Shown piece by piece: positions 15,030 to 37,943 of a DNA stretch of 56,971 nucleotides. The position numbers and the translations under genes are program-made. The stretch spans positions 1-56,971 of the forward strand of contig NIVC01000549.1 of the NCBI GenBank assembly GCA_002269645.1, in the 5' to 3' direction. A model generated the notes under the pieces. It was given only the letters and a program-made list of their open reading frames with translations. It was not told the DNA's origin and ran no database searches. The stretch comes from Macrostomum lignano. Lineage: Eukaryota. Every line of letters begins with the position of its first letter. Position 1 is the first letter of the stretch.

Positions 15030-15578
15030 TCCTGGTATCATTGTGTGCAGAATGATGTATCATTAGTATACAATTCCTGGTATCATTGTGGGCAGAATGA
15101 TGTATCATTAGTGTACATATTCCTGGTATCATTGTGGGCAGAATGATGTATCATTAGTGTACATATTCCTGGTATCATTGTGGGCAGAATGATGTATCAT
15201 TAGTGTACATATTCCTGGTATCATTGTGGGCAGAATGATGTATCATTAGTTTACATATTCCTGGTATCATTGTGGGCAGAATGATGTATCATTAGTTTAC
15301 ATATTCCTGGTATCATTGTGGGCAGAATGATGTATCATTAGTGTACATATTCCTGGTATCATTGTGGGCAGAATGATGTATCATTAGTTTACATATTCCT
15401 GGTATCATTGTGGGCAGAATGATGTATCATTAGTTTACATATTCCTGGTATCATTGTGGGCAGAATGATGTATCATTAGTGTACATATTCCTGGTATCAT
15501 TGTGGGCAGAATGATGTATCATTAGTGTACATATTCCTGGTATCATTGTGGACAGAATGATGGATCATTTGTGTACAT
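15030..15578. repeat. 46-bp intergenic minisatellite ATTCCTGGTATCATTGTGGGCAGAATGATGTATCATTAGTGTACAT, about 12 copies
   Basis: Near-identical units 46 bp apart (15121, 15167 ...) with no unique spacers. Confidence 0.97.
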
Positions 15579-16021
15579 AGGTTACTCAGGCTCCACTTTA
15601 TGAGGTTAAGTTGACAGGCCCTTCTGCTTAGGTTTATTTCATAGGTAAGTTGCATGTTTGGTCAAAAAGTAAGTCACACCGACTTACTTTTTAAATCAGA
15701 GGGGTTGCGCATGTACCTGTATGTCCCTCGAATCATACTAGATTAATCATGCATACAGTGCAGGAGTAGTCAGCTTACTCTATATGCCAATTTTGAACTA
15801 TATGAGTCAGTAGTGCGCAACGCAAATTACTTGAAGCACAATTATCTCATTAGCTGGGCATTGTCTAAAAAAGCATCAGAGTCTAAAAATAGATTTTCCA
15901 CTCTATTTAAACGTTAATAAGCGCCATTTGCAGTTTAGCATCTTTCAGGAACTAAAAGATAAGTTCAATCAACATTTTTTTTAAAATTGCAGTCACTCTT
16001 CTAACCTGTACTATCATCCAC

Positions 16022-17960
16022 ATGCCGCCACCTCCGCCGCCACCGCCGCCTCCACCGCCACCGCCTCCGCCGCCGCCTCCGCCAGCACCCTCGGCTCCGA
16101 AGGCACCAAGCGGCGGAGCTCCAAAGCCTCCCGGCGGTGGGAACGATAGAAATGCCCTGCTGGGCGCCATTCAGAAAGGTACACGGCTAAAGAAAGTGCC
16201 TGAAAGCGAGAAAAATGATCGCAGCACTGCACTAGTTGGATCGGACAAGCCAAGTGAGTCTATGGACTTGTGCTCATTTATTTATTTCTGCTGTTTTCAG
16301 TGAGCTGCTGCACTGCTCCACCTGATACCTCAGTGAGCTTATGGCTTCACAAATATTATAGTTCACCTTTCCAGATCCTCAGTTGCTGGGCCAGCCTCCC
16401 AGATCCTCAGTTGCTGGGCCAGCCTCCCAGATCCTCAGTTGCTGGGCCAGCCTCCCAGATCCTCAGTTGCTGGGCCAGCCTCCCAGATCCTCAGTTGCTG
16501 GGCCAGCCTCCCAGATCCTCAGTTGCTGGGCCAGCCTCCCAGATGCTCAGTTGCTGGGCCAGCCTCCCAGATGCTCAGTTGCTGGGCCAGCCTCCCAGAT
16601 GCTCAGTTGCTGGGCCAGCCTCCCAGATGCTCAGTTGCTGGGCCAGCCTCCCAGATCCTCAGTTGCTGGGCCGGCCTCCCAGAGTGTCAGTTGCTGGGCC
16701 AGCCTCACAGATCCTCAGTTGCTGGGCCAGCCTCCCAGAAACTCAGCAACTGGGTGTCACCCTCCCAGGTTTTCGTTGGCTGCTTCTGGCTCTTATATTT
16801 TGATTGAAATGAACGGTTTTGCTTATAGGCACTGTCAAAATATCCACCATTGCCCAGGCAACGGCCCGTCGTCGGCCAGACCGTCTCCAGCAGCTGGCGG
16901 GGGAGGCGGAGGCGATGACACCTCGTCGGGACCGAGGCCCGCAGCTCCGTTTTCAATGGGCGGCGGCGGCGGCTCTCTGCAAGACGAGCTGGCAGCTCGC
17001 ATCGCCCGTCGCCAGAATAAAGCTGGCGGAGGCGGAGGGGGCCCAGGTGGCGGCGGAGGCGGAGCTCAGAAAGCCTCTCGGCCCGGTCCAAAGCCGTTCA
17101 TCCCCGCCGCTGCTGCCACCTCGGGTGCTCCGCCTCCGCCCGCGGCTAATCTGAAGCCGACGGCTTCGAATGCCCCACCAGCTGCAGCAACAACGCCTCC
17201 GCCGCCTCCATCTCCGGGTTTGAAGCCTGCAGTGCCAGCCGCATCTGGGCCGCCTCCGCCGCCTCCATCTGCGGGTTTGAAGCCTGCAGTGCCAGCCGCA
17301 TCTGGGCCGCCTCCGCCGCCTCCATCTGCGGGTTTGAAGCCCGCAGTGCCAGCCGCATCTGGGCCGCCTCCGCCGCCTCCATCTGCGGGTTTGAAGCCCG
17401 CAGTGCCAGCCGCATCTGGGCCGCCTCCGCCGCCTCCATCTCCGGGTTTGAAGCCTGCAGTGCCAGCCGCATCTGGGCCGCCACCGCCACCGCCGTCGCA
17501 GAGCCAGAAGCCAGTTTCGCCAACGACGCCAGCTGTACAGCAGCAGAAGCCGCCGCCTCCGCCTCCCGTACCGCCAGTTGGAAAGGCGCCCTCGCCAGAA
17601 GCGGCTATTAACAAAGCAATGCCCGGTTTAAAAGCAGCCGGGATTCCTAGTTTGCCTCCGCAGTCACAGCAGCAGCGGCCGCCGCCAGTGCCGCAGCACC
17701 CTAGGCCGGCTCCAACGCCTTCAACGGGCCCTTCAAAAGGTGTTGCTAGTCGACCGCCTCCGCCGCCGCCGCCGCCTCGCGCTCCTCCGTCAGTGCCGCC
17801 GCCAGGTCCGCCTCAACAGCAGCAGGCGCAGCGTCAGCAGTTTCAACAGCAGCAGCCACGCCAGTCACGCGGCTTTGCTGATAGATTCACTTTTAAGCCA
17901 ACGACGTCATTTCCGCGAGTTCAACCATTCACTAACGCTTTTAATAAATCGAAAGGTTAA
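16022..17960 (+). CDS. WIPF: WASP-interacting protein (WIP/verprolin family). Exons 16022-16253 and 16858-17960
   Basis: N-terminal polyproline, then the WH2 motif RNALLGAIQKGTRLKKV..EKNDRS, a proline-rich body, and a C-terminal WASP-binding-like DRFTFKPTTSFPRVQPF. Donor A|GTGAGT at 16254 and a phase-matched acceptor CCCAG| at 16857. Confidence 0.88.
16372..16750 (+). repeat. 28-bp minisatellite AGTTGCTGGGCCAGCCTCCCAGATCCTC, about 13 copies, in the WIP intron (family A, locus 1)
   Basis: Direct tandem units; the 28-aa periodicity in three frames confirms a 28-bp unit. Confidence 0.97.
17195..17490 (+). repeat. Coding 57-bp tandem repeat (19 aa GPPPPPPSAGLKPAVPAAS, about 5 copies) in WIP exon 2
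   Basis: TGAAGCC(T/C)GC recurs at 17221, 17278 and onward, in frame. Confidence 0.95.
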
Positions 17961-19706
17961 TAATGTAAAATTCATTTATTCATTCAACATTAGTTCGGTT
18001 TATTATATTGCAACGATTTTCTTGTTAAGAACCGTTTAAGATAACAGAGCTATTTTGCTAGCAAACCCTTTATTTGTCTCTGTTATATAAGAGTTAACCT
18101 GTCGATTTCATTCACTTTGTCTTGACCCGCCACCGTTTCACCTAATGCCTGCAGTACAATTTAAACATCCAAGATGAAATGAAATGTGTTGCAGTTTTAA
18201 ACCGCATATTATTAACTGTCTAAGACTAATCTTGCTGGCGATAAACTTGCACCAGACCCCCCCCCAAGTTCATTCTTTAATTGCCGCTCAAAACTGCCCC
18301 TTAATGTGTTCGCTCATCCGCCGCATTCCACAGCCCCAAAGTTTCTCGCCCCCCGCGTCGACTTCTACCCTCTCCGCGCGGACAGTAGCTAATGTACATT
18401 CCTGTTTTCTTATCTTTTCAATGTACATTCGTTTTTTCTTTTCTTATCCTTGGGCTGGCCACCCCCCCCCCGAGGGGGCGCGCAGATTGCAGACTGCCAT
18501 CAGGCAATAAAGAATCAACCTAGCTTATTTACGTGCTGCTGTGTCGTGCCTTATGCAAGAAGTTCAAAAAAATTCTGCGCAAGGCGAATTCACCCCACCA
18601 TTTATATTGGTCTATTTGTCAGTTTTAGATTAATTATAAAACATTCAACTGTGGTTTTTTTATCTACTAATAGTAGAACAGTGTAAAATATACATCATTT
18701 TAAAATGTCTGTTTTTATCTAATGTCTTAAAAATAGCGACAGAACACTTATACTACTGTATCTCCGTATTTATTTAAGTCTTGACTTTTTTCTTTGTATC
18801 TTCGATGGTGCTATGAAGGATGCAGTCCCACATTGTTCTGACAAGTTTCTTAAATCCAGACTTTGGTATCGGTACTTCGTACTACTACCTACCCAACTGT
18901 AACATTTTTATCATCGAATTTTGTCTCCATGCCCACTATTCTTTTTTCGCAACTATTTCGGAACATTTCTGTTTTGCTTTCCATTAAAATTTTATGAATA
19001 GTATGAAGGGAAGTAAGATATAAAAGTGTCAATTTTATTCAAGGAATTCAATTGTGCGTATGCAACTTTGGCAGATGTGTTCCATTTTGATTCCTATCAA
19101 TTATTTTTTTCTGTTTTGTACTTGGTCTTTTGTTACCAACTGACTCTCTTGTGTCTCACCGTTTTTTTTTTAATTAATTAGGCCGTGATTTTTGTACTAG
19201 TAGCGAATTTTACAATATATCAATGGTTTTATGTATTGACTATGCGGTCGCTTCAAACACATGGATGCTTCCAATTTTCATGGTTAAATTTTGATTCATT
19301 GCTTTATCAATTTCAATCGGTTGTGCGCCTTATTATGTTAATTTGAATTTGTTACACCCAGTTGGCGGCATAGAGAATGCCGAAAATATTATTATTTTGA
19401 TATTTATGCATAGAAATTAAACATTATCAGCTAAGGAACAGCATCGACCATGTATTGCGGAGTGATAGATGAATTTTATTCAGTTCGTATACAATGCTTG
19501 TTTTCTTTTCTTCTTTATTTTCCTAGTATTCAACAAAAGTTTTTTTAATTAGTTTTCTTACTACTATCAGCGACTCAGAGCGTTTTACTATATTTTTTAT
19601 ATATCGTTTAAAATATTCCCGCTTATTTATCTTCATGATGCTCCCTCCAATTAGACTGGTACAGTTTCACTAAAACTGTTGCGCCCACTTTTCCGTTTAC
19701 TAATAA

Positions 19707-22700
19707 ATGGAAGAACCTCTAACGCCACCGGCAAGCAGTTTTGCGGCATTGCGCAGCGAAAATGACGACCTTCGCGATCAGCTAGCAAAATTGCGCGCCG
19801 ACAAAGAGTTTGTCTGGTCTTTGTGGAAGAAGTTGCAAGCTACGACGCCCGATGTTGGTCAAGCTGTTAGTCTGGTTGCTCAAAGGTGAGTCGCATGGTT
19901 AATTTGACGCGACCTGCACCGTGTGTTTATATTTTACTCTTCGTCAATCAAATAAACTTGCTTTCTTAATTTCAGAGAGCGAGAACGGGCAGAAGCAAAA
20001 GATCAAAAGGTGTTGCAAATTTTGCAAGCAAAAGACGCTCGATTAGCTGAATTGGAGTCGCAAAATGCTCGACTGTCTTCGGAAATGTCCGGACTAATGA
20101 AACAGTAAGTCTTTGTATGGTAGATAATCCGGTATGTATCGAAAGTAACATGAGTTACTGTATATTGACACAGAAGGTTAGTTTGTTTATTCAAAGAGCT
20201 ATGTCTTGGTGCCTTGGTGTCTTCATGTCTTGGTGCCGGCAGTGTCTTCATGTCTTGGTGCCTTGGTGTCTTCATGTCTTGGTGCCTTGGTGTCTTCATG
20301 TCTTGGTGCCTTGGTGTCTTCATGTCTTGGCGCCGGCAGTGTCTTCATGTCTTGGCGTCGGCAGTGTCTTTATGTCTTGGTGCCTTGGTGTCTTCATGTC
20401 TTGGTGCCTTGGTGTCTTCATGTCTTGGTGCCTTGGTGTCTTCATGTCTTGGCGCCGGCAGTGTCTTTATGTCTTGGTGCCTTGGTGTCTTCATGTCTTG
20501 GTGCCTTGGTGTCTTCATGTCTTGGTGCCTTGGTGTCTTCATGTCTTGGTGTTGTAACGTTTGCCCTTTGCTTCGGTCCTATCGATTTGCCTGAAAATGA
20601 ACCTAAAACGTTAGCCTTGACTTGGTAGGGTTGCTGCCACCTTGGTGTGCGGACTCGACGCGTCGGCAGAGTTGTCTATCCGTCACCTGAAATAAAATTA
20701 ACGAAGTCACTCGGAGCAAAGGCCAAATCTGAAAATGTCTCGATAGTCGATCGTCTTAGTTGAATGCTGCTCGGACCTGAAAACCTGTAAAACCTGAAAT
20801 GAGAGGGGAGAGCTCGGAGGCAGAGACTTCACGAGTTAGCCACAATGCTCCGCGAGACGACGCAGTCTGGAGAAAAATGGCTCGCAGATGCTTCGTATTT
20901 ATAGCCGAGCGGACCCCCAAAAGTCACGTGAGTTTCATGCGGTGAGCGCGTGAAACTTCCTTATTTGGGCATTGGAATCATGCGAACGCTGCGTGATCCA
21001 TGGCCAACTTCCAAATAAGGCAACCTTGTCACGCAGCAGTGGCGTGACTCAAGGTCAGTGGCCACGCTCAGAGTGCGTGCACAGTCACGTGCTTATTCTG
21101 TGCTAAAAATAGAACATGGGCGGATGAGTCATCCTGTTTACTCCCTCTAGGCAGCCATTATACTCCGCGCAGGTGATGAGTCATTCTGCTACGCCTCCTC
21201 AGCGCGAGTGGGAAGACATTGAGTGTGGCTGCCCGCGCCCGCTCAGGCGATGAGTCATCGGGCAGTAAACACTTAGGCCCAGCACAGGGTAACTCTCTCA
21301 CTAGCTCAGGTGGACTGAGATACTGTGCAGCGGATCACAGCACTCTTAAGGAAAGCTAGTGAATGCTTCTGAATAGCCAGTTAGCAGCCAGTCACTACAG
21401 TGTCTTCATGTCTTGGTGCCTTGGTGTCTTCATGTCTTGGTGCCTTGGTGTCTTCATGTCTTGGTGTCTTCATGTCTTGGTGCCTTGGTGTCTTCATGTC
21501 TTGGTGTCTTGGTGTCTTCATGTCTTGGTGTCTTCATGTCTTGGTGCCTTGGTGTCTTCATGTCTTGGTGTCTTCATGTCTTGGTGCCTTGGTTTCTTCA
21601 TGTCTTGGTGCCGTAGCGTCTTCTTGCGCTTTAATCTAAATTATTAATTTGGCTACGCTGTGGATTCGAACCAAGGACGCAGATTTGGAGCGAGAGTTTA
21701 CTCTGCAAGCAATCCTCATACGTAAAAGAGACGTATAAAAGAGATAAATTTAGTTTGGTAAAAACTCTATGTAATAAATTTGTTATTGTCTCCCAACGCA
21801 GAAAATCGGATTTGTTAGAAAGAGTCGAACGACTTGACGCCGAAATTGTCGGCTTGCACGATAAAAATCGCCACCTTAACGGACAGGTGAGTTAATTGGT
21901 GATTCGATTCGCTTGAATCCTTTATGACCTATGTATCAATGCAGTTACAGATTTAACAATCTGTATGATTATGACCAGTATTGCCAATCTGTATGACCAG
22001 TATTGCCAATCTGTATGACCAGTATTACTAATCTGTATGACCAGTATTACTAATCTGTATGACCAGTATTACCAATCTGTATGACCAGCATTACCAATCA
22101 ATATGACCAGTATCACCAATCAATATGACCAGTATTGCCAATCTGTATGACCAGTATTGCCAATCTGTATGACCAGTATTGCCAATCAATATGACCAGTA
22201 TTGCCAATCTGTATGACCAGTATTGCCAATCTGTATGACCAGTATTGCCAATCTGTATGACTAGTATTGCCAATCAATATGACCAGTATTGCCAATCAAT
22301 ATGACCAGTATTGCCAATCTGTATGACCAGTATTGCCAATCTGTATGACTAGTATTGCCAATCTGTATGACCAGTATTGCCAATCTGTATGACCAGTATT
22401 ACTAATCTGTATGATCAGTATCACCAATCAATATGACCAGTATTGTCAATCTGTATGACCAGTATTACTAATCTGTATGACTTGTATTGCCAATCTGTAT
22501 GACCAGTATTACCAATCTGTATGACCAGTATTGCCAATCTGTATGACCAGTATTGCCAATCTGTATGACCAGTATTGCCAATCTGTATGACCAGTATTGC
22601 CAATCTGTATGACCAGTATTGCCAATCTGTATGACCAGTATTGCCAATCTGTATGACCAGTATTGCCAATCTGTATGACCAGTATTGCCAATCTGTATGA

Positions 22701-25700
22701 CCAGTATTGCCAATCTGTATGACCAGTATTGCCAATCTGTATGACCAGTATTACCAATCTGTATGACCAGTATTGCCAATCTGTATGACCAGTATTACTA
22801 ATCTGTATGACCAGTATTGCCAATCTGTATGACCAGTATTGCCAATCTGTATGACCAGTATTACTAATCTGTATGACCAGTATTGCCAATCTGTATGACC
22901 AGTATCACCAATCAATATGAACAGTATTGTCAATCTGTATGACTAGTATTACTAATCTGTATGACTTGTATTGCCAATCTGTATGACCAGTATTACTAAT
23001 CTGTATGACCAGTATTGCCAATCTGTATGACCAGTGTTACTAATCTGTATGACCAGTATTGCCAATCTGTATGACCAGTATTACTAATCTGTATGACCAG
23101 TATTGCCAATCTGTATGACCAGTATTACTAATCTGTATGACTTGTATTGCCAATCTGTATGACCAGTATTGCCAATCTGTATGACCAGTATTACTAATCT
23201 GTATGACCAGTATTGCCAATCTGTATGACCAGTATTACTAATCTGTATGACCAGTATTGTCAATCTGTATGACCAGTATTACTAATTTGTATGACTTGTA
23301 TTGCCAATCTGTATGACCAGTATTACTAATCTGTATGACTTGTATTGCCAATCTGTATGACTAGTATTACTAATCTGTATGACCAGTATTGCCAATCTGT
23401 ATGACCAGTATTGCCAATCTGTATGACCAGTATTGCCAATCTGTATGACCAGTATGACCATCTCAATTTTTCTCCGCCAGCTAAAAAATGTCGAGCGCGG
23501 CGCGCAAAGTCACGACACTTTGGCGCGCGACAGTCTGGCGCGCAGCGAAGCTGAGGCCAGCCGCCTGCGCGCCCAAGTTGGCGCCCTGCAAGCCGAAGCC
23601 GCCGAACTGCGCGACCAGGCGGCTAGCGCGCGGCTGGCGGCGCGCCAATCGCTCGACGAAAGTCGGGCAGCGCGCGCAGCAGCAGCCGCCGATAAAGAGC
23701 GCCGCGATCAACTGGAAGGTCAGGCAGCTCTGCTGCAGCAGGTTCAATCGCTTCAAGAGGGAACTCAGGTGAAAATCAGATTTTAAATACTATATACACA
23801 TAGATAATCTTTTATTACATAGTCAACATCCTACAAATAAACATCCTACAATTAAACATCCTACAATTAAACATCGTGTAAGTAAACATCCTACAATTAA
23901 ACATCCTACAATTAAACATCCTACAATCAAACATCCTGCAATTAAACATCCTGCAATTAAACATCCTGCAATTAAACATCCTGCAATTAAACATCCTGCA
24001 ATTAAACATCCTGCAATTAAACATCCTACAATTAAACATCCTACAATCAAACATCCTGCAATTAAACATCCTGCAATTAAACATCCTGCAATTAAACATC
24101 CTAAAATTAAACATCCTACAAGTAAACATCCTACAATTAAACATCCTACAATTAAACATCCTGCAATTAAACATCCTGCAATTAAACATCCTGCAATTAA
24201 ACATCCTAAAATTAAACATCCTACAAGTAAACATCCTACAATTAAACATTCTGCAAGTAAACATCCTACAATTAAACATTCTGCAAGTAAACATCTTACA
24301 ATTAAACATTCTGCAAGTAAACATCCTACAATTAAACATCCTGCAATTAAACATCCTGCAATTAAACATTCTGCAAGTAAACATCCTACAATTAAACATC
24401 CTACAATTAAACATTCTGCAAGTAAACATTCTACAATTAAACATCCTACCAGTAAACTTCCCAGAAGTAAACACAGAAGAAAAGTTCATAGACCCACAAA
24501 AGCCACAAAATTGCTGCCAGGCCAAGCCAATTGACAAATGACTCAATTGCAGGCCATGCTGGAGACTCAATCAGACGAGATCACCGGCCTGAGAACCGAA
24601 CTTCAACGCTGGCGCGACCGATGCAGCGAGTTGGAATCTCGCTGTCTAGCAGCCGAAGGCAACGACGACGCTGCTGCGCGACCTTCGGCCGCGACCTCGC
24701 CCGTGACAGACTATCCGTACAAAGTGGCCCAGCTGGAGGCTCAGGTGGCCAATTTGAAAAGCCGTCTGCGCAATGTTGGCACAACGCCAGTGCCGCAGGC
24801 CATGGTGGAACTGCAGAGCAAGGTGAACGCAGCCAATAAGCGGGCAGCCGCTGCCGAGGCCGAGTTGAAACTGCGGGACGCTGAAGCTGCCCGGCTGAGC
24901 GGCGAGTTGCGCAATAAATCCGCCAGGGTGACTGCGCTGAAGGCTTCACTGCGCCAGGCCAAAGCTGATGCTGAACAGCGGCTGGAGACTGAGCGACTGC
25001 TTGAAGAGAAGTGAGTCAGTCGATCGATCAGGTTTAGTTTACAGAGAACATCCTACTTAGGAGTAGTGAGAATAGAATATAAAGCGAATTTCTGCTCTGT
25101 CTACTTTGAGCTTTGTAGTAGTAACCACATGAAAGTTTAATGCTAGCTGATAATAGGTATGATTTCTTAAAAAGATGCTTGAGTACCTTGGCGGGTGTTG
25201 GAGATGTGGAGTGTTGGAGATGTGGAGTGTCGGAGATATGGAGTGTCGGAGATATGGAGTGTCGGAGATGTGGAGTGTCGGAGATGTGGAGTGTCGGAGA
25301 TATGGAGTGTCGGAGATATGGAGTGTCGGAGATGTGGAGTGTCGGAGATATGGAGTGTCGGAGATGTGGAGTGTCGGAGATATGGAGTGTCGGAGATATG
25401 GAGTGTCGGAGATATGGAGTGTCGGAGATATGGAGTGTCGGAGATATGGAGTGTCGGAGATGTGAAGTGTCGGAGATATGAAGTGTCGGAGATATGGAGT
25501 GTCGGAGATATGGAGTGTCGGAGATATGGAGTGTCGGAGATATGGAGTGTCGGAGATATGGAGTGTCGGAGATATGGAGTGTCGGAGATGTGGAGTGTCG
25601 GAGATATGGAGTGTCGGAGATGTGAAGTGTCGGAGATATGAAGTGTCGGAGATATGGAGTGTCGGAGATATGGAGTGTCGGAGATATGGAGTGTCGGAGA

Positions 25701-28700
25701 TATGGAGTGTCGGAGATGTGGAGTGTCGGAGATATGGAGTGTCGGAGATGTGAAGTGTCGGAGATATGAAGTGTCGGAGATATGTGAATCATCAGAGATA
25801 TGAAGTGTCGGAGATATGGAGTGTCGGAGATATGGAGTGTTGGAGATGTGGAGTGTTGGAGATGTGGAGTGTTGGAGATGTGGAGTGTCGGAGATGTGGA
25901 GTGTCGGAGATATGGAGTGTCGGAGATATGGAGTGTCGGAGATATGGAGTGTCGGAGATATGTGAATCATCAGAGATATGAAGTGTCGGAGATATGGAGT
26001 GTCGGAGATGTGTGTCGTAGAAGTGAAATATCGCCGATATTAAATGTCCGAAATATCACAGTAACCCTGACGGTATCCTTATGTTTGTGAACTCGCTGAG
26101 CTCCTCTCCTCTCAACAATTATATATAGCAGTTTTGTCCACTAATTAATATTGAACTCTTGATAAAAAGAGTAAAATAGAGTACTAGCGGAGCGGCGACG
26201 ACATCAAAAGCTAGATTTTTATCTTCAAATTGGAATCATCTGTATAGATGAACTATATAGCAGTTTAGATGAATTTAATTAAACTAGCGCCGGCAACATC
26301 AAAAGATTCTTATCTTTAATAAAAAAATCATCTAATAGATAAAATAGCATTTTGGTAGCGGCGGCAACTTCAAAGGAATCTTTTTATCAGCAATCATCTG
26401 TCTCAATTTTCAGTGCGCGCTTGCAGAACGAACTGGCCCTGGTGCAGGTGCAATTAGACGAGCACGCGGCCACAGGCCAGCAGTTGCGCAAATCGTTAGA
26501 CTTTGAGAGGCGTGCCAACGCAGAGCTTAGCCAGGCTCTTGAGTCCGCCAACTCAGCAGCTCAAGCTGCCGCTGCTCAACCTGATGAGGTGCGAGAGCTC
26601 ACTAATGAGCTGGATAGTGCCCGACGCAAGGTGTTGCAGCTGCGCGATCTGATTGGTCGGCAGACTCGCGAGCTGGAGGGTCACGCGCGCGCCAGGCGCG
26701 AAGCAGAAGAACGCGCAGAATCGGTGCGCGCAGAATTGGTGCGCAAGAGTCAGGTTAGCGGAACTTTTAAATATACAATAAAAACCCGATTTGTCTACTA
26801 TCAGTAGGCAAATCAGAAATGCATTAGCTAATACCGTTTTTTCTGTTGAAGTTTTTAAACTTTCTTTTATTTCTACTTTGAGTAGTGTAGTTTGAGCGCG
26901 ATCCGCAATTCAATTCTCGTTATTTTATAAAAAAAATTGAACTTCTCTCAGGTTCTAATCGAAATGAAACGTTACCTGCGTCATCTCGGCCGTCGAGTCA
27001 GCGGCCTCAGAACCGGCGCCGCGACCGCCGCTCGCCGAGCCAATCACAATCGACCAACAGCAACGGCGAATAGTCGATCGCAAATAAACGCCGAATCCGC
27101 TTCGATTATCGACGACGAGTACGACGAAGACGGCGAAGATTGCGGCTGGGAGGACGTGCCAACGGATGACTGCGGCGATGGAAGAACCGCCGCGCACAAA
27201 GATTTCGACGATGCCTCCGTCGACGGTCTCGAGGATGTCGACGAACGACAGCTGCGTCAGCCGGACAGCGGCCGCAGTCTTGGCAGAGCGATCGCCAACA
27301 GAGCCAAGAGCCAGGGCGATGCACATCGACCGATGTTCGTTGCCAGGCTGCAGGCTCGGACTGGCGCTCTTCAGCAGCAGCTGCTGCAGTGCCGTCGGGC
27401 ACGTCAGAAGGCGTCGGCGGAGCGAGATCGACTGGCTGGCGAGGTGGAACGGCTTCGAAGGGAATTGGCGCAGAGCCAGGCGCGGTGTCGGAGGCTGAAG
27501 GAGGCCTGCGATAGAGCTGTGAGATGCTGTTGTCTGTCTCACCCTGTCTCACTGTCTTTCTCACCCTGTCTCACTGTCTGTCTCACCCTGTCTCACCCCG
27601 ACTCACTGTCTGTCTCACTGTCTGTCTCACCCTGTCTCACTGTCTGTCTCACCCTGTCACGCTGTCTGTCTCACCATGTCTCACCCTGTCTCGCTGTCTT
27701 TCTCACCCTGTCTCACTGTCTGTCTCACCCTGTCTCACCCCGACTCACTGTCTGTCTCACTGTCTGTCTCACCCTGTCTCACTGTCTGTCTCACCCTGTC
27801 TCACTGTCTGTCTCACCCTGTCTCACTGTCTGTCTCACCCTGTCTCATTGTCTGTCTCACCCTGTCTCACTGTCTGTCTCACCCTGTCTCGCTGTCTGTC
27901 TCACCCTGTCTCGCTGTCTTTCTCACCCTGTCTCACTGTCTGTCTCACCCTGTCTCGCTGTCTTTCTCACCCTGTCTCACTGTCTGTCTCACCCTGTCTC
28001 GCTGTCTGTCTCACCCTGTCTCGCTGTCTTTCTCACCCTGTCTCACTGTCTGTCTCACCCTGTCTCGCTGTCTGTCTCACCCTGTCTCACCCTGTCTCGC
28101 TGTCTTTCTCACCCCGACTCACTGTCTGTCTCACCCTGACTCACTGTCTATCTCACCCTGTCTCACCCTGTCTCACTGTGTCTATTTCGCCGTCTCACTG
28201 CGCTTATCTCACCCCATCTCAGTGTGTCTATCTCACCCTGTCTCAGTGTGTCTATCTCACCCTGTCTCAGTGTGTCTATCTCACACTGTCTCATAAATCT
28301 CACCTTCTTTTTTACCATGACTCTCACCTATCTCACCATAAATCTCACCCGAATACTCACCATGAAGGTCACTCTCAGTCAGTACTTTACAACGCTTTAC
28401 AATGCTTTTTACTACCATATAAAAACAGCAACAATCGGCCAAGGACCCGGGCTACCATTCCGAAGGACCAACAGCCGAGGACTACTTGACCAAATCGGAC
28501 GAATCGACATCCGCGGCAGCGGCGGCCACAGCTGAGCTCTCCGACTCCTTAGCGCGCTGTCGTCAGGCTAAATCGCGCGCTGAACGAGAACTGCGCGTCG
28601 CTAAGGACACTATAGACGAGCTCAGGCGTCGGGTTAGAGAGGCCGAGGCGGCTGCTGCTAGCGAGCGGACAGCGGCGGAGAAGGCCAAGACTAAAGCGGG

Positions 28701-30685
28701 CACGCTGAAGGAGACCGTGAGGTGAGTCATCGGATCTTCTAAGCGTGCATTTTTTCTGACAATTGCCTTGTGCGCAATTCATGCGATTTTTTAAAATAAC
28801 GGATTAACTGCTTTATCGTGTGCCCTCCCATTTTTCCGCCAACTTATTTTTCCGCCCTTCGATTTCCGCCCTCGATTTCCGCCCCCTATTACCGCCCCTC
28901 CATTTCCGCCCCTCCATTTCCGCCCCCTATTTCCACCCCAACTGATTTTTCCGCCCCCCGATTTTCGCCTCAACAGACTTTTCCAATCCCAGCTCTGGAA
29001 TCCGCCCTCATTTCCGCCCCCTCAAACCCGCAGGCGCATCCAGTCCCAGCTGGATTCCGCCCGCTCGGCCGCCACCTCAGCTGGCGAGCAGCGCCGCAGG
29101 TTCGAGCAGCTGTGGCAGGAGAGCCGGGCCGAGCTGGACCAGGCCCGCAGCCGGGCCCGCTCGTCGGCTGTCGATTCCGAACGTCGACGTCGACAAATCG
29201 ACGAGGCGTCGAATCGAGCCCAGGCCTCCGAGGCGGCGGCTCGCGAGGAGCTGTTGCGCTGTGAGAATCGGCTGAGCCTGGCAGAACGGTTGCTAGGCCA
29301 GATTGCCAGACTAGTCGAAGCCAAGTCTGAATCAACCAGGCTGCTGGTGTCGACGCATTGCGACAGAGTGGAGGCTCTGCCGCCGCCGTTGCCACCGCAG
29401 CAGCAGCAGCCTGTCGGTCCCACAGAGTCGGAGGTGCACCAGCTTCGAGCTAGGCAACGAGCTGCCAGCATCCTGAACCTCAGCGATGGAGAGCTGGATT
29501 CGCTTCTGATGGCTTCGGGATCTCCGCAGCAGCAGCAGCAGCAGCCGACAAAGACTAAACTGGCAGAGCTGAGAACCGCAATGGGTAGCCGCGAGACCGA
29601 CAAGCAATGGGCCAATCAGTGCATGCGGTTGGCGCAGGCTGTCAAGGTTTGTGTCTTTTTGAGGAGATCACTAACTGGAAATGCATTTTGCTTCAACTCG
29701 AAATTAGATATTCAATACTCGATATTCGACATTCGATACTCGATATTCGACATTTGACATTCGGTATTCGACATTTGATATTCGACATGCGATATTTGGC
29801 ATTCGATATTCAACCCTGGAAGCTTCATATAAACAGGGGATTTTTATAAACTCTGAAACTTCAGGGGATACTTACGAACTCTGAAACTTCAGGGGATACT
29901 TACGAACTCTGAAACTTCAGGGGATACTTACGAACTCTGAAACTTCAGGGGATACTTACAAACTCTGAAACTTCAGGGGATACTTACGAACTCTGAAACT
30001 TCAGGGGATACTTACGAACTCTGAAACTTCAGGGAATACTTACAAACTCTGAAACTTCAGGGGATACTTACGAACTCTGAAACTTCAGGGGATACTTACG
30101 AACTCTGAAACTTCAGGGGATACTTACGAACTCTGAAACGTCAGGGGATACTTACGAACTCTGAAACTTCAGGGGATACTTACGAACTCTGAAACTTCAG
30201 GGGATACTTACAAACTCTGAAACTTCAGGGGATACTTACAAACTCTGAAACTTCAGGGGATACTTACGAACTCTGAAACTTCAGGGGATACTTACAAACT
30301 CTGAAACTTCAGGGGATACTTACAAACTCTGAAACTTCAGGGGATACTTACGAACTCTGAAACTTCAGGGGATACTTACAAACTCTGAAACTTCAGGGGA
30401 TACTTACAAACTCTGAAACTTCAGGGGATACTTACGAACTCTGAAACGTCAAGTAAACTTGCGTGCGGATATGCGTGCAGATTGACGGGAGCAAAATGCT
30501 TAGCAAAACTCACATGTAATTATGTCTATGGCCGAAACCTCATTGAGCCTCTTCACGTTGACTCATTCCAGGCGTACAACAGCTCACCGAATACCTCATC
30601 GCCAGCTGAGCTGGATCAGCTGCTGGACAAATTCACTGAAAAATTGGACGATTTTGTGAACACGGTCAGACTGCTAGCAAACTGA
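19707..30685 (+). CDS. CNTLN: Centlein-like centrosomal coiled-coil protein, about 1021 aa. Exons 19707-19885, 19976-20104, 21802-21886, 23481-23768, 24553-25010, 26414-26753, 26952-27518, 28429-28721, 29034-29646, 30572-30685
   Basis: N-terminal LRADKEFVWSLWKKLQATTPDVGQAVSLVAQRERERAEAKDQKVLQILQAKDARLAELE matches the centlein N-terminal signature. All nine introns are GT-AG and phase-consistent; total 3066 nt; the rest is coiled-coil-like. Confidence 0.85.
20203..21612. repeat. 24-bp minisatellite GTCTTGGTGCCTTGGTGTCTTCAT, split in two (20203-20552 and 21400-21612) by an inserted LTR
   Basis: The same unit lies on both sides of the 847-bp insertion. Confidence 0.95.
20553..21399 (-). mobile_element. 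Solo LTR of an LTR retrotransposon (847 bp)
   Basis: Termini TGTA...TACA, a 4-bp target-site duplication GTGT on both sides, and non-repetitive sequence interrupting an array. A minus-strand TATAAATA at 20903-20896 suggests the orientation. Confidence 0.8.
21955..23458. repeat. 22-bp minisatellite CTGTATGACCAGTATTGCCAAT, about 68 copies, centlein intron 3
   Basis: Direct tandem units running to about 20 bp from the acceptor. Confidence 0.97.
23822..24450. repeat. 15-bp minisatellite AATTAAACATCCTGC/AC, about 42 copies, centlein intron 4
   Basis: Direct tandem units; MFNCR periodic ORF. Confidence 0.97.
25195..26010. repeat. 16-bp minisatellite TGGAGTGTCGGAGATA, about 50 copies, centlein intron 5
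   Basis: Direct tandem units. Confidence 0.97.
27530..28330. repeat. Composite 10+12-bp minisatellite (TCTCACCCTG / TCTCACTGTCTG), centlein intron 7
   Basis: Alternating subunits that decay toward the acceptor. Confidence 0.95.
28825..29025. repeat. Short degenerate ATTTCCGCCC repeats, centlein intron 8
   Basis: Roughly a dozen TT(T/C)CGCCC-type units in a 312-bp intron. Confidence 0.8.
29700..30450. repeat. 7-bp ATTCGA(C/T) run (29700-29812) followed by a 28-bp minisatellite AACTCTGAAACTTCAGGGGATACTTACG, about 21 copies, centlein intron 9
   Basis: Direct tandem units. Confidence 0.95.
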
Positions 30686-30844
30686 CCTGCGAGCTAGTTA
30701 GTACATTATTTTTCCTTTAGAAATCTCAGCTCTCTATCTGCTCAAGTAATTCTCTAATGTTACTTATTTAAAATCGCTGAGCGAGTTAACTGCTTTGTTA
30801 ATTACTTAGTCTGTTCACTAAAGTTGCCAGCCTTCCAGATCGTC

Positions 30845-31165
30845 AGTTCTCCCAGAGTGTTAGTTGCTGGGCCAGCTAGCCACCCAGGTCCCCAGTTGCT
30901 GGACCAGCCTCCTAGAGTGTCAGTTGCTGGGCCAGCCTCCCAGAGTGTTGCAGTTGCTGGGCCAGCCTCCCAGAGTGTCAGTTGCTGGGCCAGCCTCCCA
31001 GAGTGTCAGTTGCTGGGCCAGCCTCCCAGAGTGTCAGTTGCTGGGCCAGCCTCCCAGAGTGTCAGTTGCTGGGCCAGCCTCCCAGAGTGTCAGTTGCTGG
31101 GCCAGCCTCTCAGAGTGTCAGCCGATGAGCAAGCCTCCCAGAGTGTCAGTTGCTGGGCCAACAGC
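30845..31165 (+). repeat. 28-bp minisatellite family A, variant AGTTGCTGGGCCAGCCTCCCAGAGTGTC (locus 2), just downstream of the centlein stop
   Basis: Same core as the WIP intron array; the GAGTGTC variant also occurs once there (about 16681). Confidence 0.95.
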
Positions 31166-32218
31166 CAAGAGCCCCATGAACATTTTACAAGTTGCTATTA
31201 GTACTCGTAACGCACTAGATGATGTATTAATTTCTACTGCACTTAGCGTCAAACCATTCCATGCGTATTTCCCAGTATAAAAATCAGAGCTTAATTGTAT
31301 TGCTTCATAATTTCTCATGTTCTCCGTTTTTCGTTTATAGTTTCTTAATTAAAGGTAACATAGGTTACATATATTAATAATACTTTATGTAAAAAGTGCT
31401 GTAGTTTTTTGGCTCAAATATATGTAATAGAAACATTTTTAATCATTCCGAAAAAAATTGGGAAAATTCAAATATGTTTAGTTGCCTTTTTTAACACGCG
31501 GAAATGAAGGCGGCTGCATCGGATGGAGGGCGGAAATGAGGGAGGCTCCATCGGATGGGGGGGCGGAAATGAGGGTGGATGCATCGGATGTGGTGGAAAT
31601 TAGTTGGACATGCAATATTGTAAATGTGAATGTTTCATTTTACAAATACGAAGGCGGAAAACGCTAATTATACTACTGAAGAAAGACTAGATACTAGATT
31701 TTTGCATATTTAGTCATTCATGTAATTAACGCTGATATCTGTATTTTTAACACTGACCATTCAAAAGCCCATTAAGCTTGCCTTTTGGACATCGAACACA
31801 GTAAGTATATACATGTAAATTCAAGAAAGAATCCAAAATCCAAGTAGATCCAGTTTTAATAAAAATGTAAGCAGATAGAAAAAAAGAGCAGTTTATTAAG
31901 TAACTTATAATAAATTGTGTAATATACCGAGCTTATTCAGTACTCGATTGGATAAACAGCGCAAGAAAAGTAGGCAAACACAAAATAGATAAAAATCGGA
32001 ATAAATAGTTTTTTAAAACAAAATCTCATCAATAAATTATACATGGCTATCATTATCAATAAAAACCATGGATTCATTAAGGTACACATGGCAATTAAAT
32101 ATATACTACAATGCATACAAATCTGTTCTGGAATCGGCAAAAGCCATGGAAAAAAATTGTTGACGCAAAATCCAGCGTGTTTTCCAGCGGGATTTACAAA
32201 TAACAAAAAAAAAGTTAA

Positions 32219-35200
32219 TTACAGCTGCTCCGACACCTGATGCAGCTGCTCGCCCAGTGAGGCCAATTCAGAGCGGAACTCCAAACCCTGAAAGCAAAAG
32301 TTTATATCGATTTTTTATTTAATTTTAATCGACCCAATCATAATGGATTGCTAATCTATCTCTCCAATTAGAATGGATTGCTAATCTATCTCTCCAATTA
32401 GAATGGATTGCTAATCTATCTCTTCAATTAGAATGGAGTGCTAATCTATCTCTTCAATTAGAATGGATTGCTAATCTATCTCTTCAATTAGAATGGATTG
32501 CTAATCTATCTCTCCAATTAGAATGGATTGCTAATCTATCTCTCCAATTAGAATGGATTGCTAATCTATCTCTCCAATTAGAATGGATTGCTAATCTATC
32601 TCTCCAATTAGAATGGATTGCTAATCTATCTCTATCTCACAATCTTAATGGATTGCTAATGCATATCTCCAGTCAAATGGATTGCTAATCTATCTCTCCA
32701 ATTAAAATGGATTGCAAATCTATCTCTTCAATTAGAATGGATTGCTAATCTATCTCTATCTCACAATCTTAATGGATTGCTAATGCATATCTCCAGTCAA
32801 ATGGATTGCTAATCTATCTCTCCAATTAGAATGGATTGCTAATCTATCTCCTCAATCAGAATGGATTGCTAATCTATCTCCCCAATCCTAATGGATTGCT
32901 AATCTATCTCTCCAATTAGAATGGATTGCTAATCTATCTCTCCAATCATAATGGATTGCTAATCTATCTCCCCAATCAGAATGGATTGCTAATCTATCTC
33001 CCCAATCCTAATGGATTGCTAATCTATCTCTCCAATTAGAATGGATTGCTAATCTATCTCCCCAATCCTAATGGATTGCTAATCTATCTCTCCAATCATA
33101 ATGGATTGCTAATCTATCTCCCCAATCAGAATGGATTGCTAATCTATCTCCCCAATCCTAATGGATTGCTAATCTATCTCTCTACTCCAGCCAGCACTCA
33201 CGCTGTGATGGCCATCGGGCACTCCCTCCAGCCCGCCATTCAGCAGGCCATACAGGCAGCAGGCGATGGCCCCCGTAGAGTCATTGTCTCCGCCGTGCAG
33301 CACGGCAGCTTCGCACAGTCGCAGCCATTGTTCACCGCTGCCCTCGTCGCCACCACCGCTACTCCCAGCGCCGCAGGCGAACAGCAGAGCATCGTAGGCG
33401 ATCATCGGGGCGTCGTGACCGGAGGCGCCGCCCCAGCCGCTGTAGGACAAAGACTTGTAGAAGGCGTCTCTCTCGGCCGGGCCGTAGGGCTGCTTGAACT
33501 GCGCCGGCCCCCGGCCGTCAAGAAGGCCGCGTTGGCGAAGGTAGTTGGCCCAGGCGGTGGAGAAGTAGGGCCAGTGGCGCTTGTTCTCAGCGAGGTCGCG
33601 GCCTGCAGGGAGAACGAAGGGGCTTTGTACAGCAACTGAGGATCTGGGAGGCTGGCCCAGCAACTGAGGATCTGGGAGGCTGGCCCAGTAACTGAGGATC
33701 TGGGAGGCTGGCCCAGCAACTGGGGATCTGGGAGGCTGGCCCAGCAACTGGGGATCTAGGAGGCTGGCCCAGCAACTGAGGATCTGGGAGGCTGGCCCAG
33801 CAACTGGGGATCTGGGAGGCTGGCCCAGCAACTGAGGATCTGGGAGGCTGGCCCAGCAGCTGAGGATCTGGGAGGCTGGCCTAGCAACTGAGGATCTGGG
33901 AGGCTGGCCCAGTAACTGGGGATCTGGGAGGCTGGCCCAGCAACTGGGGATCTGGGAGGCTGGCCGAGCAACAGAGGATCTGGGAGGCTGGCCCAGCTAC
34001 TGAGGATCTGGGAGGCTGGCCCAGCAGCTGAGGATCTGGGAGGCTGGCCCAGCAACTGAGGATCTGGGAGGCTGGCCCAGCAACTGAGGATCTGGGAGGC
34101 TGGCCCAGCAACTGAGGATCTGGGAGGCTGGCCCAGCAAGTGAGGATATGGGAGGCTGGCCTAGCAACTGGGGATCTGGGAGGCTGGCCCAGCAACTGAG
34201 GATCTGGGAGGCTGGCCCAGCAACTGAGGATCTGGGAGGCTGGCCCAGCAACTGAGGATCTGATAGGCCGGCAGCAGCCACAGACTCACCAGTCTCCTCC
34301 ACGTACTTCCACGCGGCCGGCAGTGCGGTTTGCAGCAGTTCAGCTCCCCATTTCTCCAACGGCTGGCCTTGCAAAGCGAGCGAGGCGAAGTAGGCAGAAG
34401 CCAGGCTGCCCAGGTAGCCAGTGGGGTGGTTGTGGGTCATCCTGCCAGCCTCCACAGCGGTGGACACCAGCCGCTTGAGCTGGTGCGGCTGCCAGAACAC
34501 CATGCCGATGCACATGGACCGCATGGCACCACCGCAGCCGCCGCCTCTTCAAGATTTTTAATCAATCGTTTTTATTAGCTTTAGATAAACTATAAATTTT
34601 AAATCAGGCAACGATATTTAAAATATTAAATCAATTACCGATCGTTAAATTCGATTTTGTAACCGCCAGTGTCTATGAGATCGTTGCAGCTGAATGAGGT
34701 GCAGTCACCTGCGCGTGTTAAAATATAATTATGCAGCTAGATAATCAGTTCGTGAGCGATCATTCTTAGAAACGGGTGAAAAGTTTTCTAAGAAATGGAT
34801 TGAGTCGGATTGTAAAAAACGAATTGATTGAATAAGATTCTTAGAAACGGAGTGAATTCTTACAATCCGGTGAAAAAGGATTCTTAAAAGTGTGAATAGA
34901 ATTCTTAGAAATGGGTGAAATAGGATTCTTAAAAGTGTGAATAGAATTCTTAGAAATGGGTGAAATAGGATTCTTAGAAATGGGTGAAATAGGATTCTTA
35001 GAAATGGGTGAAAAAGGATTCTTAGAAATGGGTGAAACAGGATTCTTAGAAATGGTTGAAACAGGATTCTTGGAAATGGTGAAATAGGATTCATAGAAAT
35101 GGATGAAATAGTATTCTTAGAAATGGGTGAAATAGTATTCTTAGAAATGGGTGAAATAGGATTCTTAGAAATGGGTGAAATAGGATTCATAGAAATGGGT

Positions 35201-36397
35201 GAAATAGGATTCTTAGAAATGGGTGAAATAGGATTCTTAGAAATTGGTGAAATAGGATTCTTAGAAATGGGTGAAATAGGATTCTTAGAAATGGGTGAAA
35301 AAGGATTCTTAGAAATGGGTGAAACAGGATTCTTAGAAATGGTTGAAACAGGATTCTTGGAAATGGTGAAATAGGATTCATAGAAATGGATGAAATAGTA
35401 TTCTTAGAAATGGGTGAAATAGTATTCTTAGAAATGGGTGAAATAGGATTCTTAGAAATGGGTGAAATAGGATTCATAGAAATGGATGAAATAGTATTCT
35501 TAGAAATGGGTGAAATAGTATTCTTAGAAATGGGTGAAATAGTATTTTTAGAAATGGGTGAAACAGGATTCTTAGAAATGGGTGAAATAGGATTCATAGA
35601 AATGGGTGAAATAGGATTCTTAGAAATGGGTGAAATAGGATTCTTAGAAATGGGTGAAGTAGGATTCTTAGAAATGGGTGAAATAGGATTCTTAGAAATG
35701 GGTGAAATAGGATTCTTAGAAATGGGTGAAATAGGATTCTTACAAATGGGTGAAAGAGGATTCCTAGAAATGGTAAAATATGATTTTGGAAAAAATAAAA
35801 TATAATTTTTGAAAATAGTGAAAGATTTTTTAAATGTGTGAGATATATAGTTGTTTAAAAAGGGGTGGAATTAGCATAGTTAAAGCGTAGTTGAAAACTG
35901 ATTGACTAGAACTCGTAAAAACGAATAAAATAAGATTCCTGGAACAGGATTAAATATGATTCCTAGTAATAGGCAAAAGCTACGTTTCTAAGAAATGGGT
36001 GAAAGCTATAATTCTTAGAAACATTTTAAAGCTGTAAGTAAAAGCCACAATACTTGTAATTTAAAAAATTGCGAAATTAATACAAAAACTAACTCACCTG
36101 GGCTCCGACCAGCCATATAGTTCATGCAGTCGCAGTACTCCTTAGCCAGCTGCAGGTACAGCTGCTCCTCGTCCGGCGCGGTTGTCTTGGCAATTAAAGC
36201 TGGCATTAAATATAAATAATAGGAGAATAAAAACTGCCGATAAAACATTAACTAACTAAGTAACTGACTGACTAACTAACTGACTGACTGACTGACTGAC
36301 TAACTGACTTACTAACTGACTAACTGACTAACTAACTAACTGACTGACTAACTGACTGACTGACTAACTAACTAACTAACTGACCAACTAACTAACT

Positions 36398-36444
<47 letters not shown>

Positions 36445-36477
36445 GACCAACTAACTAACTAACTAACTACTGACTAG

Positions 36478-36511
<34 letters not shown>

Positions 36512-36547
36512 GACCAACTAACTAACTACTGACTAGCTAACTGACTG

Positions 36548-36622
<75 letters not shown>

Positions 36623-37651: not shown

Positions 37652-37687
37652 GTCTGTCTGTCTGTCTTAGAGTCTGTCTTAGTGTCC

Positions 37688-37735
<48 letters not shown>

Positions 37736-37740
37736 TAGTG

Positions 37741-37789
<49 letters not shown>

Positions 37790-37794
37790 TAGTG

Positions 37795-37839
<45 letters not shown>

Positions 37840-37902: not shown

Positions 37903-37943
<41 letters not shown>

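What the first reader, a model, noticed from the sequence alone, without database searches (positions are those of the whole stretch)
16372..34262. One 28-bp minisatellite family at three unlinked sites, always in the sense of the nearest gene and with no carrier element
Seen: AGTTGCTGGGCCAGCCTCCCAGATCCTC occurs in the WIP intron (+), just after the centlein stop (+) and in ADPRH intron 4 (-), reading the same way relative to local transcription each time. The flanks share only about 15 nt (CTT(T)CCAGATC(C/G)TCAGTT) at two loci, with no TIR, TSD or poly-A. Inference: the array itself disperses (RNA- or circle-mediated, or by gene conversion), or orientation is filtered by splicing. With three loci, same orientation has a 1-in-4 chance probability.
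Basis: partly seen in the sequence, partly recalled or inferred. Interest (0 to 1): 0.7.

Follow-up and report, generated by a model that had tools for sequence, protein, structure and literature searches.

The report
Dispersed 28-bp minisatellite in flatworm genes
A 28-base tandem repeat sits at three places (two introns and one gene tail) within 18 kb of the flatworm Macrostomum lignano genome, always reading with its host gene; but a third of this region is such repeats, three cases cannot show an orientation rule, and it looks like an ordinary dispersed repeat family.

Summary
AGTTGCTGGGCCAGCCTCCCAGATCCTC forms three arrays: A1 16371-16746 (+), A2 30849-31160 (+) and A3 33630-34262 (-). 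There are 39 matches against 0 expected. The window is Macrostomum lignano. The hosts are a WH2/proline-rich (WIP-like) gene intron, the stretch 165 nt after the centlein stop (probably 3'UTR), and ADPRH intron 4. All three arrays read in the sense of the host gene.

Three corrections apply:
- The sites are not unlinked. All lie within 17.9 kb.
- The "shared 15-nt flank" is only the degenerate first repeat unit.
- Three of three in one orientation has p=0.25.

I found no TIR, TSD, poly-A or shared flank. The same tests did find a TIR carrier around a different array 1 kb upstream. Tandem arrays cover 36% of the window, and four of five ADPRH introns each hold a different array.

A1 and A3 have identical consensus units. 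A2 differs by a 3-nt block that recurs once inside A1, so the arrays share descent or exchange sequence.

The best reading is short-range DNA-level copying of array segments, followed by local expansion. An eroded transposon carrier is the main rival. No M. lignano genome was reachable, so the genome-wide orientation test could not be run.

Verdict: new member of a known kind, with modest interest.

The parts
16352..16785 (+). Array A1. The core is 16371-16746: 13.4 units of 28 bp, 95% matches, six of them perfect consensus units. It holds a block of four GATGCTC variants and one A2-type unit at 16661-16688. Degenerate edge units extend it to about 16352 and 16785.
16254..16857 (+). Host intron of A1 in the WH2/proline-rich (WIP-like) gene. 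The donor is CCAA|GTGAGTCT at 16254. The acceptor CCCAG| at 16857 is inferred because only it keeps the proline-rich reading frame.
   Evidence: plus reading of the frame
30813..31175 (+). Array A2. The core is 30849-31160: 10.9 units, 87% matches, with unit tail AGAGTGTC in place of AGATCCTC. Both edges are decayed, with indels. It begins about 130-165 nt after the centlein stop.
30683..30685 (+). Stop codon (TGA) of the centlein-like gene. The first poly(A)-signal variant on + after it is ATTAAA at 31348, so A2 is probably in the 3'UTR.
33629..34281 (-). Array A3. The core is 33630-34262: 22.6 units, 94% matches. Its consensus is identical to that of A1, and it has private GATCCCC variants. 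One degenerate unit lies next to the donor.
33603..34289 (-). ADPRH intron 4 (687 nt, phase 1 in Gly223), host of A3. Only 27 nt at the donor end (GTGAGTCTGTGGCTGCTGCCGGCCTAT) and 27 nt at the acceptor end (TACAAAGCCCCTTCGTTCTCCCTGCAG) are not core array.

Best explanation
The three arrays are one minisatellite lineage. It was copied at the DNA level over a short range (18 kb or less) into three transcribed but non-coding positions of a Macrostomum lignano gene cluster, in a genome where almost every intron here carries its own minisatellite.

A piece of an existing array was seeded at a new site. The likely routes are break repair with ectopic template use (template switching or interlocus gene conversion) or re-insertion of array-derived DNA. 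No transposase or poly-A retroposition step is needed. Each copy then grew, shrank and homogenised on its own by replication slippage and unequal exchange, while its edge units decayed.

At least two transfers at different times are implied: an older one giving A2 and a younger one linking A1 and A3. The shared sense orientation is most likely chance.

Shown: common descent or exchange, absence of recognisable carrier signatures, physical clustering, and the general array load of the region. Inferred: the copying mechanism, its direction, and its local nature.
For: - The units are near-identical at three sites with unrelated flanks.
- The A1 and A3 consensus units are identical in 28 of 28 positions. 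A2 differs by the block TCC>GTG, and exactly that block occurs once in A1 at 16661-16688. Each array also has private variants in blocks.
- No TIR, direct repeat above shuffles, or A/T run flanks any array. The same searches detect a 50-nt TIR pair around the 46-bp array at 15029-15579.
- Three arrays lie within 17.9 kb. My own Poisson arithmetic uses the 764-Mb assembly size from PMC5730564. If N arrays were scattered at random, P(3 or more in 57 kb) is about 7e-5 for N=1000 and about 0.04 for N=10,000. So the family is either very abundant or locally clustered.
- 36 arrays cover 36% of the window, so array birth and growth is rampant here.
- Carrier-free spread of satellite arrays by microhomology-mediated repair, eccDNA or interlocus conversion is documented in Drosophila (PMC7403614) and Tribolium (PMC11610590).
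Against: - No empty site, paralogous copy or genome-wide census could be examined, so the insertion boundaries and the mechanism are unobserved.
- A1 and A2 share a C>T change in their first, edge unit (CCTT(T)CCAG). This hints that a defined left end was copied too, which fits a bounded element better than circles cut from the interior of an array.
- Similarity does not follow distance. A2 and A3 are the closest pair but the least alike.
- If the family has 10^4 or more copies genome-wide, no local process is needed.
Confidence: 0.45

Rival explanations
1. The arrays are the internal tandem-repeat cores of a non-autonomous transposon (MITE, foldback or Helitron-like), or parallel expansions of a short seed that such an element delivered. 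Its termini have since been lost, overgrown or deleted.
For: - A clear example sits in the same window. An 831-bp element at 14793-15623 has 50-nt TIRs and carries a 46-bp x12 array derived from its own subterminal sequence.
- This route is one of the established ways satellites spread (PMC11610590, discussion).
- The first units of A1 and A2 share the same derived change, as if a fixed left boundary had been copied.
- Weak short matches lie just upstream of the arrays: AGTCTGT in A2 and A3, and GTTCAC in A1 and A2. I read these.
Against: - Flank alignments are no better than shuffles and show no BLAST hits.
- There are no inverted repeats in any of the three host segments and no TSD.
- In ADPRH intron 4 at most 27+27 nt are available for any carrier, and part of that is itself a degenerate repeat unit.
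- The short shared k-mers are within chance expectation (about 0.04-0.3 expected per pair, my own arithmetic).
Confidence: 0.25
2. The array travels as, or makes, an intron. This would be an introner-like or reverse-spliced unit that can insert only in the sense of a transcript, using a GTGAGT head and its own pyrimidine-rich CAG motifs as splice signals.
For: - All three copies are sense.
- ADPRH intron 4 is essentially all array. It lies at a lineage-specific position, 10 codons upstream of an intron shared by Patiria, Ptychodera and Physella that M. lignano lacks.
- The A1 and A3 introns both begin GTGAGTCT(A/G)TGG.
- The A1 5' intron flank resembles diverged units carrying CAGTGAGC (p about 0.05).
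- Each sense unit carries two acceptor-like motifs.
Against: - A2 is not in a recognised intron.
- GTGAGTC..TGG is common to other donors in this window (19886, 25011, 28722, 36808).
- ADPRH intron 5 is at a conserved position yet is just as full of a different array. So an array-filled intron does not imply a new intron.
- The 3' ends of the A1 and A3 introns are not alike.
- The homogenised unit has only a poor donor (GTTGCT).
- The age of intron 4 relative to the array is unknown.
Confidence: 0.08
3. The repeat is kept in sense orientation because its RNA or DNA does something. It could be a splicing or 3'-end regulatory element, or a protein-binding array.
For: The array is sense in three transcribed positions. 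It has a C/T-rich sense strand and its core is well conserved.
Against: - With n=3, p=0.25.
- Copy number and variants differ freely between sites.
- There is no Rfam match and no unusual fold (z -1.0 and +0.7).
- Dozens of unrelated arrays occupy equivalent positions.
Confidence: 0.04
4. Assembly artefact: one array was mis-placed or duplicated by a long-read assembly of a very repetitive, partly duplicated genome.
For: The M. lignano assemblies are known to be difficult and redundant (PMC5730564).
Against: - Each array has its own variant pattern, copy number and unique junctions with verified exons.
- The ARH1 protein model on record (P0001) reads straight across intron 4.
Confidence: 0.03

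Closest known systems
Euchromatic satellite spread in Drosophila (Rsp-like and 1.688 on the X; Sproul et al. 2020, PMC7403614)
   Same: Short satellite arrays appear at new euchromatic loci without a transposon carrier. They then expand by unequal exchange. The proposed routes are microhomology-mediated repair, eccDNA and interlocus gene conversion.
   Different: - The units there are 100-360 bp, not 28 bp.
- There, insertions go into pre-existing arrays of another satellite, and junction microhomology was shown. Here the junctions cannot be reconstructed.
- No orientation relation to genes was claimed there.
Cast1-Cast9 satellites in gene-rich regions of Tribolium castaneum (PMC11610590)
   Same: These are dispersed arrays in gene-rich euchromatin. 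Junction and flank analysis found no common motif for most families. Two routes were proposed: transposon carriage and eccDNA insertion.
   Different: That was a genome-wide study with eccDNA shown by 2D gels. Here there are three arrays in one window, much shorter units, and arrays that fill introns.
Non-autonomous transposons with central tandem repeats (foldback/Tetris-type, MITEs), including the in-window element at 14793-15623
   Same: A minisatellite is multiplied and moved as cargo. The same genome region has such an element.
   Different: The 28-bp arrays show no TIR, TSD or shared flank.
Introner elements / intron transposition
   Same: The same sequence sits in introns of unrelated genes in sense orientation. 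One host intron is at a lineage-specific position.
   Different: - Similarity is confined to the array and does not span the intron ends.
- One copy is outside any recognised intron.
- There is no TSD or TIR.
- Copy number is unknown.
Classical GC-rich minisatellites (units of 10-100 bp, variant-block structure)
   Same: The unit length, G+C richness, strand asymmetry, blocks of variant units and decayed edges all match.
   Different: Classical minisatellite loci are usually single-locus families that share only a short core. Here whole 28-bp units are identical between loci.

Membership tests
Minisatellite (tandem array, unit 10-100 bp) | Head-to-tail copies of a 10-100 bp unit, with variant units arranged in blocks | tested here: met
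   Period 28, with 10.9-22.6 copies at 87-95% matches. Variant blocks are seen.
Dispersed (multi-locus) satellite family spread without a carrier | The same unit at several loci with unrelated flanks | tested here: met
   Three loci. Flank alignments equal shuffles and there are no flank BLAST hits.
Dispersed (multi-locus) satellite family spread without a carrier | Junction microhomology, or an empty site showing an array-only insert | not testable with these tools
   No M. lignano genome or related species locus could be fetched.
Dispersed (multi-locus) satellite family spread without a carrier | Presence of the unit in extrachromosomal circular DNA | not testable with these tools
   This needs Circle-seq or 2D gels.
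TIR transposon / MITE / foldback element carrying a tandem core | Terminal inverted repeats bracketing the array | tested here: not met
   0 inverted pairs in 16254-16830 and 33590-34300, and only AT-rich 11-12-mers far from A2. The positive control at 14793-15623 was found.
TIR transposon / MITE / foldback element carrying a tandem core | Target-site duplication and flanks conserved between copies | tested here: not met
   The longest direct repeats are 5, 5 and 7 nt. The 7-mer (p=0.046) lies inside exons, not at the edges. Flanks are not conserved.
Retroposed copy (LINE-mediated) | 3' poly-A tail and a TSD | tested here: not met
   No A or T run of 6 or more within 60 nt of any edge, and no TSD.
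Introner-like element | Similarity spans the whole intron including both ends, in many genes | tested here: not met
   Only the array is shared. The donor similarity GTGAGTCTRTGG is largely the local donor consensus. The 3' ends are unrelated. A2 is not in a recognised intron.
Introner-like element | Host introns at evolutionarily new positions | tested here: inconclusive
   ADPRH intron 4 is at a position not seen in Patiria, Ptychodera, Physella or Nematostella. No flatworm relative could be checked, and the WIP intron was not tested.
Known structured RNA | Match to an Rfam family, or a fold better than shuffles | tested here: not met
   0 Rfam hits at the gathering threshold. Fold z-scores are -1.0 and +0.7.

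The most novel reading that the evidence does not exclude
The 28-bp array is a sense-only, transcript-linked mobile unit. It is a tandem array whose units supply pyrimidine-rich CAG acceptors and, in older units, a CAGTGAGC donor-like motif. It could therefore seed or relocate spliceosomal introns. ADPRH intron 4, which sits 10 codons from a lost ancestral intron, would be an intron made by such an insertion.
Probability: 0.07. Interest if true: 0.8.

Novelty: new member of a known kind. Interest (0 to 1): 0.3.

Why it matters
If the local, carrier-free copying is real, this locus is a compact case of how minisatellites colonise neighbouring introns and UTRs. The M. lignano genome is 15% simple and tandem repeats (PMC5730564), and in this window 36%. 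The repeat content of Macrostomum genomes has not been analysed in detail (PMC10468722). The family could serve as a tracer for the process that fills M. lignano introns with arrays. In the less likely case, it could link tandem repeats to intron turnover. As it stands, it is one more dispersed repeat family, and the orientation pattern is not statistically supported.

Tried and rejected
- **Fetching more copies of the family or paralogous/allelic copies of the locus.** The exact-protein look-ups for M. lignano ARH1 and for the 1294-aa ORF found nothing. A protein search with the translated array found nothing. Pattern scans of metagenome and prokaryote genome contigs gave 0 hits. A literature search for the unit sequence gave 0 papers. 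The genome-wide orientation and flank census therefore could not be done.
- **Hidden carrier.** All-against-all BLAST of 200-nt flanks of all 36 arrays, Smith-Waterman comparison of 300-nt flanks against shuffles, TIR search and TSD/poly-A search were all negative for the 28-bp family.
- **7SL/Alu-like origin.** I considered this because of GGGAGGCTG...GAGGATC on the antisense strand. There is no Rfam hit at the gathering threshold, so I dropped it.
- **Hairpin-driven instability.** The DNA folds are not better than shuffles.
- **A general strand rule for arrays relative to transcription (C>G on the sense strand).** My rough family-level count compositions is 9-10 against 4, which is not significant.
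- **Other multi-site families as extra orientation tests.** The 24-bp pair lies in one intron. The TAAC and CT-rich arrays are of low complexity. The GGGATT group lies in one gene. None is an independent test.
- **Donor-head homology between the A1 and A3 introns.** This is largely explained by a local extended donor consensus.
Full report
**What is there.** The 28-mer AGTTGCTGGGCCAGCCTCCCAGATCCTC matches 39 times with at most 3 mismatches, against none in 100 dinucleotide-preserving shuffles. The matches form three arrays, which Tandem Repeats Finder also reports:
- A1: 16371-16746, + strand, 13.4 copies, 95% matches.
- A2: 30849-31160, + strand, 10.9 copies, 87% matches.
- A3: 33630-34262, - strand, 22.6 copies, 94% matches.

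**Organism and hosts.** Two exons flanking A3 are 100% identical to ADP-ribosylhydrolase ARH1 of Macrostomum lignano, so the window is from this free-living flatworm. Mapping that protein gives six ADPRH exons on the minus strand. A3 lies in intron 4 (34289-33603), which is phase 1 in Gly223.

A1 lies in an intron (16254-16857) of a + strand gene with a WH2 motif and long proline-rich repeats, consistent with 'WIP'. I inferred the acceptor at 16857 because only it keeps the proline-rich frame.

The + strand coiled-coil gene running from 19.7 to 30.7 kb has an N-terminus 55% identical to fish centlein. Its stop is at 30683-30685, about 165 nt before the A2 core. The first poly(A)-signal variant on + after that stop is at 31348. 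The ADPRH signal on - is at 31892. So A2 is probably in the centlein 3'UTR. All three arrays therefore read in the sense of their host transcript.

**Corrections to the observation.**
- The sites are not unlinked. They span 17.9 kb, and A2 and A3 are 2.5 kb apart across the convergent 3' ends of centlein and ADPRH.
- The 'shared 15-nt flank' is the first, degenerate repeat unit. A sliding comparison with the consensus shows unit-like sequence from about 16352 to 16785 (A1), 30813 to 31175 (A2) and 34281 to 33629 (A3). Similarity falls to background outside these limits.
- Three of three in one relative orientation has a chance probability of 0.25.

**Context.** 36 arrays with TRF score of at least 150 cover 20.6 kb, which is 36% of the window. 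Four of the five ADPRH introns are each filled by a different array:
- Intron 1: (TAAC)n at 36249-36735.
- Intron 2: a 24-mer at 34869-35792.
- Intron 4: A3.
- Intron 5: a 30-mer at 32334-33182.

These arrays leave only short splice-signal ends. Only the 89-nt intron 3 is array-free. Published work gives 15% simple and tandem repeats for the whole genome (PMC5730564) and notes that Macrostomum repeat content awaits detailed study (PMC10468722).

Nearly all arrays here belong to families seen once. A self-comparison of the window finds only the 28-bp family in several genes. The other multi-site cases are a 24-mer split within one intron, (TAAC)n, CT-rich low-complexity arrays, and related GGGATT arrays within the GH116 gene.

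**Carrier search.** Flanks of 200 nt from all arrays share nothing between A1, A2 and A3. Smith-Waterman scores of 300-nt flanks, for 5' against 5', 3' against 3', inverted and direct comparisons, fall within shuffles. One exception is the A1 inverted comparison, with a score of 28 against a null maximum of 27, and it gave no repeat in the dedicated search. The longest direct repeats across each array are 5, 5 and 7 nt. The 7-mer lies inside exons. No A or T run is present.

The methods do detect a carrier where one exists. The 46-bp x12 array at 15029-15579 lies in an 831-bp element with 50-nt terminal inverted repeats (14793-14842 and 15574-15623). Its unit is an inverted copy of the element's subterminal stretch.

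For the 28-bp family, the space left for any carrier is small. In ADPRH intron 4 there are 27 nt on each side, and the donor-side stretch aligns to the unit (p about 0.03).

**Relationships between the arrays.** The A1 and A3 consensus units are identical in 28 of 28 positions. The A2 core differs at three adjacent positions (TCC>GTG). Exactly this block occurs once in A1, at 16661-16688. A2's 5' edge in turn holds GATC-type units. Each array also has private variants in blocks: GATGCTC x4 in A1 and GATCCCC in A3.

This means common descent or exchange, not convergence. A2 is more decayed and its edges carry indels, while A3 is long and sharp-edged. That points to at least two events of different age.

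**Mechanism.** The best-supported reading is DNA-level copying of array segments to nearby sites, followed by independent expansion and homogenisation. This is the behaviour described for euchromatic satellites in Drosophila (microhomology-mediated repair, eccDNA, interlocus conversion; PMC7403614) and Tribolium (PMC11610590).

Clustering supports a short-range process, unless the family is extremely abundant. With N arrays placed at random in 764 Mb, P(3 or more in 57 kb) is about 7e-5 for N=1000 and about 0.04 for N=10,000 (my own Poisson arithmetic).

One observation counts against pure interior-derived circles. The first units of A1 and A2 share a C>T change (CCTT(T)CCAG), as if a fixed left end had been copied. 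This keeps an eroded carrier as the main rival.

**Orientation and splicing.** Reading the unit, the sense strand offers two acceptor-like motifs per unit (CCTCCCAG|A and TCCTCAG|T) and one poor donor (GTTGCT). The antisense strand has no GT and no pyrimidine tract. A purifying splicing filter would therefore not favour the observed orientation. The ARH1 protein model on record reads straight across intron 4, which implies that the model splices the intron out.

**A less ordinary possibility.** ADPRH intron 4 is not at an ancestral position. Patiria, Ptychodera and Physella share an intron 10 codons downstream, after the W of KxW|xYF. M. lignano lacks that intron, and Nematostella has neither. 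Both array-bearing introns begin GTGAGTCT(A/G)TGG. The A1 5' flank also holds diverged units reading CAGTGAGC (p about 0.05). This could mean that the array came with, or made, the intron.

Several points count against this:
- GTGAGTC..TGG recurs at other donors in the window.
- Intron 5 is at a conserved position yet is equally array-filled by another family.
- A2 is not in a recognised intron.
- The 3' ends of the two introns are unrelated.

I rate this reading at about 7-8%.

**Limits.** No M. lignano genome sequence beyond the window was reachable.

**Verdict.** This is a real, previously undescribed dispersed minisatellite family of a known kind. No paper holds its sequence. The sense-orientation pattern is unproven and the interest is modest.

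Noticed in passing
window 1-56971; ADPRH introns at 36809-36219, 36092-34731, 34289-33603 and 33201-32291: 36 tandem arrays cover 36% of the window. Four of five ADPRH introns, and most centlein introns, are each filled by a different minisatellite family, leaving only short splice-signal ends. Only the 89-nt intron 3 (34549-34637) is array-free.
   Followed up: partly
window 14793-15623: An 831-bp foldback/MITE-like element has 50-nt terminal inverted repeats (84% complementary). It carries the 46-bp x12 array at 15029-15579, whose unit is an inverted copy of the subterminal stretch 14850-14893. No clear target-site duplication was seen.
   Followed up: partly
window 13329-13769: A 441-bp MITE-like element with 39-nt terminal inverted repeats (95% complementary).
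   Followed up: no
window 33603-34289 (ADPRH intron 4): The intron position (phase 1 in Gly223) is lineage-specific. A sea star, an acorn worm and a snail share an intron 10 codons downstream that M. lignano lacks. Introns after residues 79, 137 and 356 are at conserved positions.
   Followed up: partly
window 17194-17488: An in-frame coding minisatellite in the WIP-like exon: 57 bp (19 codons, PPPPPPSAGLKPAVPAASG-like) x5.2 copies at 97% identity.
   Followed up: no
window 36249-36735 and 53277-53669; 37652-38051: Two (TAAC)n arrays of about 100-120 copies lie on the same strand, in introns of two different minus-strand genes (ADPRH and a GH116/GBA2-like gene). There is also a (GTCT)n array of about 98 copies.
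   Followed up: no
window 2543-3121 (-): An open reading frame resembling the C-terminal part of a non-LTR retrotransposon reverse transcriptase. I judged this by eye from the translation and did not search it.
   Followed up: no
window 818-1516: A 21-bp x33 array whose unit starts with splice-donor-like GTAAGGTAGG on the + strand. Its host transcript was not determined.
   Followed up: no
donor sites at 16254, 19886, 25011, 28722, 34289, 36808: Donor sites in this window often extend beyond GTGAGT to GTGAGTC..TGG. This may be a species-specific extended 5' splice-site consensus.
   Followed up: no
window 51233-56841: A run of related G/T-rich arrays (GGGATTCTAG, GGATCTGGGATTGG, TTGGGATTTGGAATTGG...) all lie on one strand within the introns of the GH116 (GBA2-like) gene.
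   Followed up: no
L004 (Dreissena polymorpha): The ADPRH homologue of the zebra mussel is intronless (1083-bp single exon), unlike the multi-exon genes of Physella, Patiria and Ptychodera.
   Followed up: no
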